DNA from: Ophelia neglecta
Lineage: Eukaryota
Length of the DNA stretch: 64,000 bases
Assembly: GCA_965285935.1 (NCBI GenBank)
Contig: OZ260662.1
Span: forward strand, 78,802,001 to 78,866,000
Direction of reading: 5' to 3'
This document shows, piece after piece, positions 4,552 through 41,117 of the stretch (its first letter is position 1; each line of letters opens with the position of its first letter). The notes beneath the pieces are model-generated. The model made no database searches. It had not been told where the DNA came from and saw only the letters and a program-made list of their open reading frames with translations. Made by a program: the position numbers and the translations under genes.

Positions 4552-4675
4552 ACAAGAAATGCCTTCTACATCCCAATTGAGGAAAAAGATGAAAACCGAC
4601 CTGGCATCTGAGTATTCTAGTGGCCTGAGCAAGCGGCATCAAACCAAGCTACAGAAGAAAATCAGCAACCTATAA
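4552..4675 (+). CDS. DDX31: Probable terminal coding exon of DEAD-box RNA helicase DDX31 (Dbp7 family); upstream exons lie outside the window
   Basis: Strong acceptor (T-run-GCATTACAG ending 4551), then x-QEMPSTSQLRKKMKTDLASEYSSGLSKRHQTKLQKKISNL-TAA. AATAAA follows at 4728, 4802 and 4812. The basic tail with SEYSSGL matches my recollection of the DDX31 C-terminal SEYSSGM motif. Its position convergent with Barhl fits the recalled synteny. Confidence 0.62.
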
Positions 4676-4727
4676 AAATCGCGCAAAATAGTTGCAGCAA
4701 GAATTGTAATTAGTTTAGTCATCTGTT

Positions 4728-4817
4728 AATAAAGGTGCTAAAATGAGTTTCGTCAGAATCTCAATCTACAATGTCATCGTCTTTTCTGTATATTTATGGA
4801 GAATAAAACTGAATAAA
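4728..4817 (+). terminator. Polyadenylation signals of the plus-strand (DDX31-like) gene
   Basis: Three AATAAA hexamers (4728-33, 4802-07, 4812-17) lie 50-140 nt after the stop codon, followed by TTGTTGTT. Confidence 0.5.
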
Positions 4818-36910: not shown

Positions 36911-39900
36911 CTGCAATGAGATATACACACTGTAGAATTACGCGTAATCACCCAAGACTGCTGATTTTATTTTGGGTCAGTTCATTGTGATTCTTCGATA
37001 GTTCATTTGTTAAAATTCTTCACGAGGACTCAGATCTATTTAATTTACTTTTGTAAAAAAACGGAATTTCTGAAAATTTTTGATTCTATGCAATTGACCC
37101 ATAACCTCCTGGAATGGGCTGGATTGTCCTGCACAGTGTACAAAACGCGGGACACAATAATAGATTTTGTTTGCCTGTATAATGTCATCAATTCATTGTG
37201 ACTCTAAAACACACAGGAAGAATCTTAATTAAACCATGAACTAGGCGATCAATTGCTCTAACAAAATAAGGCTTTAAATCGCTTCTATATTATGATTAAC
37301 TCTGCTAGGCACGATATTTGACGATTAATAATTCGATGTGAGTAACTTTTGCTTTGGGTTTGTTTTTGGCGCCTTCGAGCAATGATGAGAGTGTAGCAGA
37401 CGATCACGCGATGCTATCTCCTAATCTCAGCTCTGATTGATCAGCTATCTACTACATAGCGATGAACTTGCAGAACGCCGTGAAAGTGTTTATTTGTTTT
37501 GATCATCTTTATTGATGATAAAAATAGATCTATACTAGGCAAACAGATTTCCAAAGGAAAACAGGTATAAAATCGGAATTATTGCACCGTAAACCATGAG
37601 AAAATTGGAGAATTTGTGTTGGGAAATCAAAGAAAATTCGCTGAATTTGGTGTCAATTTGTATATTTGTTTCACTCCTGCTTTCCAAGTCCCGAGACTAT
37701 GTAATATGATAGCCCTATAACTATCATAAACTAGATAATCTTCATACAATTCTTTTGGCTGTAAATAAATTTAACCGGTATAATCTGTAGAGCAGAGACT
37801 ACAGGTTTTTACGATTCCTGTGTTACTATAATTTTTAAGCCCTGCGTCTGCGTGTCTGAGCATAAAATATTATCTTAATTTAAAAAGTGCATGTAGTCCA
37901 AAAGGCCTTTATTAAAAGATAGCGCGGCCGTGCATGCCTTGAACAGGTTCCAAAAGGCCAACAGGCCAATCGAAACTTATTGCCTCTGAACTATGAAATC
38001 CAAGAGAAGTGGGTCTGTTGACAGGTGTTGGCTGCTAAAGACATACGATTAAATTGATTTTAAAAATTAATGAAATTTCTAAATGAATCCAATTTTCTAT
38101 TGATAAAAAGGACATTAATCATATCGGCCGAATGAGAGAGGCCGATACTTCTCTGGCAGACGTGGTACTACTAAAACCGCGAATAATGAAAAGAAAATAT
38201 GGGGCATTTATACGAATTGCGCCTTTACTCAAACTTTCATTAATTTTACATTACAAATTTATAGTATTTTGATTCCCTCAGTTTGTTCTGTAACCCACTA
38301 GACACGAATAACAGTCTTGCTCAGATAGGGCCTACCTCAAACAGGATTGCAAAAATATGGACCAACTCCTGAGAAAAATATTTCGAGTGCATGTGTTTTT
38401 GGGGCGGGTCGACGCTCATCAATCAGATATTTAACCGGACCCACTACCTGTGACATGGCAGTGACACCTTTTTACAAAGTCCAAATTGACACGAGCGGCA
38501 CAATTTAATTATTCCCCGCAGCAAACGACACAGTCACGTGTCAGCGGAAACGATATGAAATTTTGTTATTAAAATCATCTTTGTCGATGGCGCTAATTTC
38601 ATCGACGATAATAAGAATCGGCCCGAGGCAATATCAGGTGAGGCTCGAGTTGTTTCGGACAGGTAGTAAACGCGCGCCGTGATTGCCAACTGACACAATA
38701 CCACGCCAACTGAGAGAAACAGCCAACGTTTGTGCTCGGCAGATTCACCTGCATCCCATTGTTAGAGTTTAACTGTCGCCATTCATATTCTTCCTGCCAC
38801 CGCAAGCGGCCCTCCCACCGACATTGCGGTATTTCCGAGTGGCTGGTTTTATTTGTCCGTCATTTAGGCGGCTTGTTGTCCATTTTACACCATCGCGGGG
38901 TGCGCGCTGAGAGCACATTGTCATTTCTACAAGATCAACCTAACTATCGTGCCACTTGCTTCCTAAACCTGAGTGGATTATATAATATTGTTCATTATTA
39001 CTGCGTGCACTGTCAATATAAACATTCTGGTAAATTGAAGGCGGGACAGTCTTATATGACTTGGCATTAATTCGCGAGGCACAACAGATTTGTTTTCATA
39101 ACAGATAAAGTTATTTCAAACAAAATCGAATCCATTGCTCCGTGAGTCGCTAACATTTCGGACGAGTATACTTTCCAGATTTTATCAATAGAATAGTGTT
39201 TTATTTGTTTGTTTTTTCAGTGTATGTATATTGGGATATAAATATTTTATATTGAGGAATAAAAGTTAAAAGTAACCCGATAATGCTGACACCCAAAACA
39301 AAGAAGTAACACTCTTGAGTCTGCCATTTGTTGCGCTGCTAAAAGGTAAAATTATCGCTGGACAATCTCTTCAATACCGAGAGGCAAATTGCAAGCACAG
39401 CAATGCTTTTAAGCATTATTAAAATTTCCTAATGGCCTGGGTGCATCTCAGCAAAGGGATGGCAAATTGTGAATTTGTAAAGATTTGTTACGCCTCGGGT
39501 CTTCACCTCAAAGTGTTAATGTAGTACGGTATTTACGCGAGGCCTAACCGCCAGCGATTACCAGAAAAACCGTCGAAAATAAACAGCATCAACTACTCTC
39601 CCGAAGCACGCTAGCTTGGAGTAATTTCAAAGGCTTTATTTTCACACGGGAACGTCTTGTCGGAAGCTTCAGAAGAGGTGTGAACCTTGTAGGATATGGC
39701 TGTTTTAACTCGACGGGGGCTTCAGCGCTCAATTTTGACAATTTACTAAGTGTAAATGGGTTTTTGATGAACCGTGGCATCCAGAGACAGGCTGCAATTT
39801 TCTGCTTCAAAGCGGCGCAATAGAGAACCCACGCTTTAGCTTTCCACACAAACACAGAAAGTAAGTGGAGTGAGACTTTGTTTAATTACGTGGAATCAGG

Positions 39901-40624
39901 TAGACTTACAAAACATAATTTATCAATCTACGGTGTATACCTATCAGAATAACATTATGAGCTACAGGCCTAGCTTCACACATATGTACTAGCTTCGCAA
40001 AGCGTTATATTGCCTCAGTTACCTAGGTTTCTACTAGTTAAATTTGTACTTGGTAACACAATTTCATTGACATACGAGCGTGTATACTCATGCAGGTAGG
40101 TGTATGCTTGTTATTGCTTAAAAACACTTCCAACATCATTGACTGTCAAATGAAGTCATCCGGAGTCAATTCTTACAAACAACACGTGCCTAAGGCGCGA
40201 AGATAGCACATCCGCCTTGGGCAATGGAAACTTCTTTAAAATAATAGTGTATACTCGTCTAGATAACTTCTATACTTTGTATTGCTGTCATTCACACTGC
40301 CGAGGGTGAAGTACCAGTGATAATGTATTGGTTTACGCGGCTGTAGAACCTTATATAGATTTTGGGTTGTAAATACAGCTGCCGTCGACAGCCATATAGA
40401 AATATAAAAGCACAATGTAAACCAAAACATGCAGTCCACAATGGGAAGCTCACGAGTTTTGATAAAACGCCTCTGACGGTCCGGATCTTGTAATTCGTGT
40501 TTTAGTGATTTTTGAAATATAGATGCAATAGATCTGACAGCATTTCATTATAAATGGTATCAAGTAGAGGTTTAATTGTTAATGTCTGACAGTATATATA
40601 TGAGTTATTGTCGGTAGAACTTAC

Positions 40625-41117
40625 CTATACTTCTGTTGAGAGATGTGTCGTTGTCATCCTCCTCCTCGTCGTCGGTGTCCATCATTGTTCTTTTTTCTCC
40701 CCTTGTTTCAAACGGTACACTGTTTAATGGTGTCCGACTTGTAAAAGCTGAGTTAGGAGATCGAATTGAAAGTGGATTAAATTCCTTTCTTGGTTTATTG
40801 TCATTAAGAATGTCATGTATCATGAAGCTTGGTCGACTGATTGAATTTTGCCGATTAGGACCAATCACTATATTGTTATTAGAATTAATAGCTAGCGGGA
40901 GTCTCTGGCTGAGTTCGGGTTTGTCCGCTCGTAGTTCGGGCGAAACCCTGTGTTCCGAGCCGGGGGAGAGGGGGGTAGTTCGGCCGCTGTCTGGCGAAGG
41001 TCCGGGACTGCGGTCCTCCTCGCGGGACCCCCGCCACGAGTCTCCCGAGTCTCGTCTTTCTCTCTTCGGGGCCATCACTCGGTAGTCCAGGCCTTCAGCA
41101 CGACGACCCGCCTCCAT
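40625..41117 (-). CDS. Barhl: BarH-like homeobox gene, coding exon 1 (N-terminus with eh1/FIL Groucho-binding motif)
   Basis: ATG at 41117-41115. The open frame MEAGRRAEG...SLNRSI contains SFMIHDIL (eh1-type FxIxxIL), S/P-rich and acidic stretches. It ends at a G|GTAAG donor (phase 1) and is 493 nt long. Confidence 0.88.

What the first reader, a model, noticed from the sequence alone, without database searches (positions are those of the whole stretch)
4552..41117. Hidden DDX31-like last exon tail-to-tail with Barhl: candidate ancient bilaterian regulatory block
Seen: a 124-nt plus-strand terminal exon below the ORF-track cutoff (acceptor, SEYSSGL motif, stop, three AATAAA) converges on Barhl across about 26 kb with no other gene. 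No preceding exon is recognisable in the 4.5 kb upstream, so the last intron is long. Recalled knowledge: human BARHL1 and DDX31 are convergent neighbours, DDX31 has an SEYSSGM motif near its end, and the fly orthologue CG8611 lies next to the Bar genes. Inference: the pair has been kept linked since the bilaterian ancestor, probably because Barhl enhancers lie in or near the bystander helicase gene.
Basis: partly seen in the sequence, partly recalled or inferred. Interest (0 to 1): 0.8.

Follow-up and report, generated by a model that had tools for sequence, protein, structure and literature searches.

The report
DDX31 last exon facing Barhl
The small exon is the real last coding exon of this invertebrate's only DDX31 (ribosome-assembly helicase) gene, and it lies tail-to-tail with the only Barhl homeobox gene, as in a millipede and in mammals; this is a sound example of very old gene-neighbour conservation, not a new kind of thing.

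Summary
Observation confirmed. Window 4552-4675 (+) is a 124-nt terminal coding exon with a strong acceptor, the motif SEYSSGL, a stop codon and three AATAAA.

- **Gene:** the other 14 exons of a DEAD-box/CTE_SPB4 helicase lie 7.6-16 kb upstream, outside the window. They match only DDX31 orthologues. The preceding exon ends in phase 2, matching 4552.
- **Motif:** a profile of the DDX31 C-terminal motif hits only this frame in 104 kb (E 1e-4).
- **Neighbour:** Barhl (minus strand, 31123-41117; best solved-structure match BARHL2) is single-copy. It converges on DDX31 across 26.4 kb with no recognisable gene between.
- **Synteny:** the same tail-to-tail pair occurs in a millipede (3.7 kb apart) and a whale (5.3 kb). 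Seven other animals were unresolved by the 10-kb flank limit. Linkage therefore most likely predates the bilaterian split.
- **Regulatory cause:** this remains inference. CpG density jumps 3.5-fold about 0.7 kb past the DDX31 poly(A) signals. A 55-kb CpG-retained domain surrounds Barhl and abuts DDX31 but does not enter it.
- **Not shown:** no RNA data exist for this species. The fly claim was not tested.

It is a new member of a known kind (ancient microsynteny, candidate regulatory block). Interest is moderate.

The parts
1..4551 (+). 3' part of the last DDX31 intron (7,603 nt in all; it starts at G000:C2:78798949, outside the window)
   Evidence: The donor after L009:6948 (AA|gtaaga) is in phase 2 and the acceptor before 4552 supplies 1 base, making the split codon AAA = Lys. 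CpG o/e is 0.17-0.32, like the rest of the gene body.
4552..4675 (+). Terminal coding exon of the DDX31 orthologue (exon 15; 1 base plus 40 codons plus stop)
   Evidence: It is the only significant hit of the DDX31 C-terminal motif HMM. Annotated Owenia, Lineus, Lingula and millipede genes show the same layout: a CTE exon followed by a short last exon.
4607..4627 (+). SEYSSGL, the conserved DDX31 C-terminal motif SE[YF]xSG[LMFI]
   Evidence: The motif lies near the C-terminus in brachiopod, nemertean, mollusc, annelid, amphioxus, hemichordate, echinoderm, fish, frog, whale and Pan DDX31.
4676..4835 (+). Predicted 3' UTR with AATAAA at 4728, 4802 and 4812
   Evidence: The poly(A) site itself was not observed because there is no RNA data.
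4676..31122 (.). 26.4-kb spacer between the two stop codons, with no recognisable gene
   Evidence: The ten ORFs of 90 aa or more have no Pfam hit at or above the curated cut-off. There is no Rfam match. It holds four GCAGACGA sites, at 17608, 22830, 23378 and 25830.
5550..61000 (.). CpG-retained domain (about 32 CpG/kb, o/e 0.65-1.0) that contains Barhl; flanked on both sides by CpG-depleted DNA (o/e 0.2-0.4)
   Evidence: The change-point is at about 5550 (9.3 to 32.2 CpG/kb) and the far edge at about 61 kb. All 9 GCAGACGA sites of the window fall at 17.6-54.2 kb, against 0.7 expected.
31123..31411 (-). Barhl exon 3 (end of the homeodomain, conserved TKWKRQTAVGLELLAEAGNY flank, stop at 31123-31125)
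   Evidence: It aligns to whale BARHL1 and millipede Barhl. It is single-copy in the genome.
36679..36910 (-). Barhl exon 2 (homeodomain residues 1-46, with Tyr in WYQNRR)
   Evidence: Pfam Homeodomain 72.9 bits. The best solved-structure match is BARHL2 at 100 bits, E 3.6e-28; non-Bar homeodomains score 50 bits or less, apart from one engrailed construct at 72 bits.
40625..41117 (-). Barhl exon 1 (ATG at 41117; FMIHDIL eh1-like motif; donor ATAG|GTAAGT in phase 1)

Best explanation
Window 4552-4675 is the fifteenth and last coding exon of this genome's single DDX31/Dbp7-type DEAD-box helicase gene. By family knowledge this is a housekeeping nucleolar ribosome-assembly factor. The gene starts about 11.7 kb before the window. 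Its CTE_SPB4 exon splices over a 7.6-kb intron into 4552. The last exon adds a Lys-rich tail carrying the DDX31-specific motif SE[YF]xSG[LM]. The gene ends tail-to-tail, 26 kb from the single Barhl homeobox gene. Shown here: exon identity, a phase-consistent 690-codon gene model, Barhl identity, and the same convergent adjacency in a myriapod and a mammal. Inferred: the adjacency descends from the bilaterian ancestor. Inferred: it has been kept because the Barhl cis-regulatory landscape fills the spacer up to the 3' end of DDX31, so a break between the genes would cut Barhl from its 3' enhancers. In this genome the landscape is visible as a 55-kb CpG-retained, motif-marked domain. In vertebrates it overlaps DDX31.
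For: - Upstream exons: CTE_SPB4 (62 bits) and Helicase_C hits lie on the plus strand 3-6 kb before the window.
- Orthology: the exon L009:2700-2933 retrieved only DDX31-named full-length proteins. tblastn of six orthologues gives a collinear exon map. Owenia DDX31 places 9 collinear exon hits only at this locus.
- Gene model: all junctions are phase-consistent, totalling 2073 nt.
- C-terminal motif: the motif HMM hits only this frame, E 1.2e-4. The motif occurs across phyla.
- Exon layout: orthologues show the same last-exon structure, and the Owenia last intron is 6.0 kb.
- Barhl: the best solved-structure match is BARHL2, and the gene is single-copy.
- Synteny: in the whale, DDX31(+) is followed 5.3 kb on by BARHL1(-). 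In the millipede, DDX31(+) is followed 3.7 kb on by Barhl(-).
- CpG: the change-point is at about 5550. Lingula shows the same CpG switch at its DDX31 3' end.
- Literature: a human BARHL1/DDX31 super-enhancer is described in PMC4911170 and PMC12209359.
Against: - No RNA evidence exists: the only runs that hold the sequence are genomic DNA contigs.
- Barhl was not found within 10 kb downstream of DDX31 in Schistosoma (a different gene is the convergent neighbour), Lingula, a pseudoscorpion, Owenia, Lineus, Cloeon or Apis. This is unresolved, not negative, because the spacer here is 26 kb.
- No cross-phylum conserved non-coding element was found.
- The CpG-retained domain and the GCAGACGA sites do not enter DDX31, so nothing here shows enhancers inside the helicase gene.
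- The pair was picked post hoc, and some ancestral adjacencies survive by chance.
Confidence: 0.75

Rival explanations
1. The adjacency is ancestral but neutral. DDX31 and Barhl were neighbours in the bilaterian ancestor and simply have not been separated in some slowly rearranging lineages. No enhancer or boundary constraint links them.
For: Seven of nine other taxa show no Barhl within 10 kb, and Schistosoma has another gene as its convergent neighbour. No shared non-coding elements were found. The Barhl CpG domain does not enter DDX31 here. The pair was noticed post hoc.
Against: The same orientation and immediate adjacency survive in three superclades separated by more than 500 million years. 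The partner is a developmental homeobox gene inside a large CpG-retained domain, the class for which constrained microsynteny is documented (PMC3514665). In human the enhancers are described as BARHL1/DDX31.
Confidence: 0.2
2. The 124-nt frame is not part of DDX31. It is either a chance open frame or the last exon of another, unrecognised gene.
For: There is no transcript evidence. Pfam has no family for the 40 residues. tblastn with whole orthologues did not pick it up because it is short.
Against: It is the only significant motif-HMM hit in 104 kb across six frames. It is on the correct strand and downstream of the gene. Its phase matches the preceding donor. Without it the frame stops right after the donor and the gene would lack the motif that nearly all orthologues checked carry. 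Four annotated orthologues have the same exon layout.
Confidence: 0.04
3. The DDX31-Barhl pairs in annelid-like, myriapod and mammalian genomes arose independently.
For: None specific. Adjacency could not be confirmed in several intermediate taxa.
Against: With roughly 10^4 genes, the chance that a given gene acquires one particular convergent neighbour is of the order of 1e-4 per lineage. Three independent origins with the same orientation are very unlikely (inference).
Confidence: 0.02

Closest known systems
Vertebrate BARHL1-DDX31 locus (human 9q34.13), with the BARHL1/DDX31 super-enhancer that is hijacked by GFI1B in medulloblastoma
   Same: BARHL1 and DDX31 are convergent immediate neighbours, checked here in a whale at 5.3 kb. 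DDX31 ends with RSEYSSGM (Pan, whale). The Barhl C-terminal flank and homeodomain are conserved.
   Different: The spacer here is 26 kb. This genome gives no evidence that regulatory DNA lies inside DDX31, because the CpG-retained domain starts after the DDX31 poly(A) signals. In whale, GTF3C4 lies head-to-head with DDX31; that neighbour was not seen here.
Genomic regulatory blocks / ancient target-bystander microsynteny (Irimia et al. 2012, PMC3514665; Kikuta et al. 2007, which PMC3235082 cites for barhl1)
   Same: A developmental transcription-factor gene with a large non-coding domain sits beside an unrelated housekeeping gene, and the adjacency is conserved across phyla.
   Different: The defining evidence was not obtained: conserved non-coding elements or enhancers of the target lying in or beyond the bystander. 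This pair is not named in the searchable text of those papers, and their supplementary lists were not available.
DDX31/Dbp7 branch of the SPB4-type DEAD-box helicases (relatives DDX10, DDX18, DDX55)
   Same: It has all core motifs, a CTE_SPB4 domain, a Lys-rich N-terminal region and a basic C-terminal tail with the SE[YF]xSG motif. The predicted 690 residues compare with 681-734 in most full-length models.
   Different: Motif V ends GLH instead of GLD, as in 5 of 339 orthologues. One intron probably uses a GC donor.

Membership tests
DDX31/Dbp7 DEAD-box helicase | DEAD-box core motifs (Q, I GSGKT, Ia PTRE, II DEAD, III SAT, V, VI HRVGRTAR) encoded by upstream exons on the same strand | tested here: met
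   The motif V Thr lies on a 60-nt exon (L009:4320-4379) that I first missed.
DDX31/Dbp7 DEAD-box helicase | C-terminal extension of SPB4 type (Pfam PF13959) | tested here: met
   62 bits in the genome scan and 58.8 bits on the exon L009:6764-6946. The genome has four such loci, the number expected if DDX10, DDX18, DDX31 and DDX55 are each single-copy.
DDX31/Dbp7 DEAD-box helicase | Closest to DDX31 orthologues rather than to paralogues, and the only such locus in the genome | tested here: met
   All named full-length hits of exon 8 are DDX31. Identity to Lineus, Owenia and Lingula DDX31 is about 60% over 10 exons. Owenia DDX31 maps collinearly only here. No formal tree was built.
DDX31/Dbp7 DEAD-box helicase | C-terminal SE[YF]xSG[LMFI] motif in a basic tail, on a short last exon | tested here: met
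DDX31/Dbp7 DEAD-box helicase | One mature transcript joining the CTE exon to 4552 | not testable with these tools
   The only runs holding the sequence are genomic DNA contigs that run straight through the acceptor.
Barhl (BarH-like homeobox) | Homeodomain closest to BARHL1/2, with Tyr in WYQNRR, an eh1-like FxIxxIL motif and the conserved post-homeodomain flank | tested here: met
   BARHL2 scores 100 bits, against 50 bits or less for non-Bar homeodomains apart from one engrailed construct at 72 bits. It aligns to whale and millipede Barhl. That the Tyr is Bar-specific rests on my knowledge of the family.
Genomic regulatory block (target plus bystander) | Gene adjacency conserved between distant phyla | tested here: met
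   This genome, a millipede and a whale share the tail-to-tail arrangement. Seven further taxa were unresolved at 10 kb.
Genomic regulatory block (target plus bystander) | Conserved non-coding elements or enhancers of the target inside or beyond the bystander gene | tested here: inconclusive
   blastn of the flanks from eight species found only Barhl coding exons. No close relative's genome was reachable. The CpG and motif proxies stop at the DDX31 3' end. Support comes only from the human literature.
Genomic regulatory block (target plus bystander) | Bystander regulated independently of the target (housekeeping versus developmental) | tested here: inconclusive
   The DDX31 body is CpG-depleted (o/e 0.14-0.47) and the Barhl domain is CpG-retained (0.65-1.0). 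This fits a methylated broadly expressed gene next to an unmethylated developmental domain. No expression or methylation data were available.

The most novel reading that the evidence does not exclude
DDX31-Barhl is a bilaterian-wide regulatory block. In this reading the 3' end and long last intron of the helicase gene have marked, or hosted part of, the 3' edge of the Barhl regulatory domain for more than 500 million years. The human BARHL1/DDX31 super-enhancer, the one hijacked by GFI1B in medulloblastoma, would then be the vertebrate descendant of that ancient landscape.
Probability: 0.3. Interest if true: 0.55.

Novelty: new member of a known kind. Interest (0 to 1): 0.4.

Why it matters
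For annotation, it rescues a 124-nt last exon that ORF-based tracks miss. It also shows that DDX31 proteins share an uncatalogued C-terminal motif (Pfam has no family for it), which can be used to check gene models.

For genome evolution, it adds a well-documented housekeeping-developmental gene pair kept tail-to-tail in spiralian, ecdysozoan and deuterostome genomes. The sharp CpG boundary at the junction gives a cheap sequence proxy for where the Barhl domain ends.

It also links an invertebrate locus to a human region of medical interest, the BARHL1/DDX31 enhancers hijacked in medulloblastoma. The kind of phenomenon is well known, and this pair may already sit in published microsynteny lists that I could not read.

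Tried and rejected
1. **RNA support.** The one sequencing-run search gave three runs of one sample. Laid on 4252-5751, they are genomic contigs that run through the acceptor, with no joints or loose ends. Splicing is therefore untested.
2. **Cross-phylum conserved non-coding elements.** blastn of the 10-kb DDX31-downstream flanks of eight species against the window gave only millipede Barhl exons. One AT-rich 52-nt match looks like chance.
3. **Transposon density from own-genome DNA searches.** The scoring was swamped by one roughly 180-bp dispersed repeat per query, so it was uninformative.
4. **Literature.** No paper held names Ddx31-Barhl as deep microsynteny. Nothing located CG8611 next to the fly Bar genes. 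The supplements of the main microsynteny papers were not held.
5. **Linkage beyond 10 kb in Lingula, Owenia, Lineus and others.** This could not be tested.
6. **Apparent Thr-to-Gln change in helicase motif V.** This was an artefact of reading an intron as exon. A 60-nt exon restores VLFCT|DVASRGL.
7. **Spliced protein.** All searches used single exons by reference.
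Full report
**Where the window is.** The window is G000:C2:78802001-78866000, plus strand, in a 762-Mb assembly. The DDX31 exons are about 60% identical to nemertean, annelid and brachiopod orthologues. Earlier notes of this scan call the animal probably an annelid. I treat it as a spiralian invertebrate.

**The observation.** Position 4552 follows a T-rich tract ending in cag. Reading from 4553 gives 40 codons that include SEYSSGL (4607-4627) and a TAA at 4673-4675. 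AATAAA occurs at 4728, 4802 and 4812.

Barhl lies on the minus strand:
- Exon 1 is 40625-41117, with the ATG at 41117, an eh1-like FMIHDIL motif and a strong GTAAGT donor.
- Exon 2 is 36679-36910 and encodes homeodomain residues 1-46, ending WYQNRR.
- Exon 3 is 31123-31411.
- The three total 1014 nt and are phase-consistent.

Exon 2 matches solved BARHL2 chains at 100 bits. Non-Bar homeodomains score 50 bits or less, apart from one engrailed construct at 72 bits. The Barhl-specific last exon is unique in the genome.

The two stop codons are 26.4 kb apart. In that spacer the ten ORFs of 90 aa or more gave no Pfam hit at or above the curated cut-off. Rfam found nothing in the window.

**Whose exon is it?** A whole-genome scan for the SPB4-type C-terminal extension (PF13959) found four loci. 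One is at C2:78798758-78798883 on the plus strand, 3.1 kb before the window. A Helicase_C hit lies 2.2 kb further upstream.

I fetched the 40 kb upstream and the DEAD-box exons are plain to read. The exon L009:2700-2933, searched alone, retrieved as full-length named hits only DDX31 proteins. These came from Schistosoma, Phallusia, a katydid, a frog, a whale and Mya. Six orthologues give a collinear tblastn exon map. Owenia DDX31 places nine collinear exon hits only at this locus.

Fourteen junctions can be drawn with matching phases:
- Thirteen use GT-AG sites.
- The exon 7/8 junction fits the orthologues only with a CAG|GCAAGT donor, so it is probably a GC-AG intron.
- The 15 exons sum to 2073 nt, or 690 codons plus a stop.

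The CTE exon (L009:6762-6948) ends AA|gtaaga in phase 2, and 4552 supplies the third base (AAA, Lys). If that intron were retained, a stop would follow at once.

Every search used one exon by reference.

**Is the tail match more than chance?** Nearly all DDX31 orthologues inspected carry SE[YF]xSG[LMFI] in a basic tail near the C-terminus:
- Lingula MSEYASGL
- nemerteans MSEFGSGF
- oyster VSEFSSGLSK
- Owenia ISEFSSGLS
- amphioxus and Ptychodera MSEFSSGL
- zebrafish RSEYDSGM
- Xenopus RSEYASGL
- whale and Pan RSEYSSGM

An HMM built from 14 of these tails, excluding this genome, was run on all 4,760 open frames of 104 kb in six frames. It scored the frame holding the exon at E 1.2e-4. The next best scored E 0.41.

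In the annotated Owenia, Lineus, Lingula and millipede genes the CTE exon is likewise followed directly by a short last exon with the motif. Owenia's last intron is 6.0 kb.

**RNA.** The only public runs holding the sequence are three runs of one sample. Their contigs cross the acceptor without a break, so they are genomic DNA. Splicing into 4552 is therefore inferred, not observed. One run carries an allele with a synonymous change and a His-to-Asn change in the exon. The motif is untouched.

**The domain structure around the junction.**
- CpG observed/expected is 0.14-0.47 across DDX31, including the long last intron.
- The best single change-point is at about window 5550, where density rises from 9.3 to 32.2 CpG per kb. 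That is about 0.7 kb past the last poly(A) signal.
- The CpG-retained state lasts to about 61 kb and then falls again.
- Barhl sits in the middle of this 55-kb domain.

The next recognisable gene beyond Barhl is a DEAH/HA2 helicase at about window +82 kb, in CpG-depleted DNA.

An 8-mer that other agents of this scan reported in homeobox landscapes (GCAGACGA) occurs 9 times in the window. About 0.7 are expected, even on the domain's own dinucleotide content. All nine lie at 17.6-54.2 kb, and there are none in the 40 kb holding DDX31.

In animals with mosaic methylation this pattern fits a methylated, broadly expressed gene abutting an unmethylated developmental domain. That is inference from established knowledge, because no methylome was available. 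It agrees with the DDX31 transcription unit ending near 4.8 kb. It also suggests that in this genome the Barhl landscape reaches up to DDX31 but not into it. Lingula shows the same switch at its DDX31 3' end: 0.25 in the gene body, then 0.71 and 1.02 downstream.

| Species | Result |
|---|---|
| Humpback whale | DDX31(+) is followed 5.3 kb later by a convergent 325-aa homeodomain gene that aligns to this Barhl (80% in exon 2, E 6e-33). GTF3C4 lies head-to-head upstream. |
| Millipede Chamberlinius | DDX31(+) is followed 3.7 kb later by a convergent Barhl (87.5% identity in the homeodomain) |
| Schistosoma | No Barhl within 10 kb; another gene is the convergent neighbour |
| Lingula, a pseudoscorpion, Owenia, Lineus, Cloeon, Apis cerana | No Barhl within 10 kb |

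With a 26-kb spacer here, the negative results are uninformative, not contradictory.

The arrangement is shared by a spiralian, an ecdysozoan and a deuterostome. Independent origin is very unlikely, so inheritance from the bilaterian ancestor is the best reading. The fly claim (CG8611 beside the Bar genes) could not be checked. NCBI does name many insect DDX31 orthologues 'CG8611'.

**Cause of the linkage.** Human papers describe a BARHL1/DDX31 super-enhancer that can control BARHL1 and is hijacked by GFI1B (PMC4911170, PMC12209359). Vertebrate barhl1 synteny has been discussed as a regulatory block (PMC3235082). I found no conserved non-coding DNA across phyla and could reach no close relative's genome. 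The regulatory-constraint explanation therefore remains the most plausible inference, at about one in two. Neutral retention is the main rival.

**Novelty.** Ancient microsynteny between developmental regulators and housekeeping bystanders is a known phenomenon (PMC3514665). This pair is not named in any text I could search, but it may be in supplementary lists that were not held. I class it as a new member of a known kind, of moderate interest.

Noticed in passing
L009:2558-2697 (G000:C2:78794558-78794697): The DDX31 intron between exons 7 and 8 fits the orthologues (SATLSSG|VERLAG) only with a CAG|GCAAGT donor, so it is probably a GC-AG intron. The nearest GT donor would add 9 residues and delete VE.
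   Followed up: partly
window 17608, 22830, 23378, 25830, 34061, 37396, 45393, 47602, 54196: GCAGACGA occurs 9 times (0.65-0.7 expected), only inside the CpG-retained Barhl domain. There are none in the 40 kb holding DDX31, and three more at +91 to +94.5 kb in the next CpG-retained stretch. This is the same word that other agents reported around NK1, Hox and Pax6 in this genome.
   Followed up: partly
window 5551-61000: The palindromic 8-mer TAGGCCTA occurs 15 times where 0.58 are expected. It was not checked whether it belongs to a dispersed repeat.
   Followed up: no
window 43428-44051 and 60863-61739: There are two long tandem arrays. One has a 14-bp unit in 44 copies, 2.3 kb upstream of the Barhl ATG. 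The other has a 20-bp unit in 44 copies, right at the far edge of the CpG-retained domain.
   Followed up: no
L008:1094-3103 (G000:C2:78783094-78785103), plus strand: A run of long open frames lies 5-7 kb upstream of the DDX31 start. It includes a P-loop-like GPPNTNKT stretch. Three of the frames (1552-3103) were scanned against Pfam and had no hit. It may be a transposon- or virus-derived helicase relic.
   Followed up: partly
L016:7708-8226 (about window +81.7 to +82.2 kb), minus strand: A DEAH-box/HA2 helicase exon is the next recognisable gene on the 5' side of Barhl, so the Barhl domain is flanked by two RNA-helicase genes with CpG-depleted surroundings.
   Followed up: partly
window 4576, 4637, 4639: One of the three DNA runs carries an allele with a synonymous Gln change and a His-to-Asn change in the terminal exon. 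SEYSSGL is unchanged. Contigs break around 4709-4837, where two alleles with a small indel differ.
   Followed up: no
L012 (Lingula anatina LFEI02000057.1), DDX31 3' end: CpG o/e switches from 0.25 in the DDX31 body to 0.7-1.2 in the 10 kb downstream. This is the same boundary pattern as in this window, although Barhl itself was not within reach.
   Followed up: partly
window 1206-1387 and 10315-10498: Two different dispersed repeats of about 180 bp each have dozens of scored copies (79-95% identity) across the chromosomes. One lies in the last DDX31 intron and one in the spacer. The second is also found in tandem at C1:144384-145480.
   Followed up: no
L009:4518-4560: DDX31 motif V reads DVASRGLH, ending in His where 334 of 339 orthologues have Asp and 5 have His.
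   Followed up: partly
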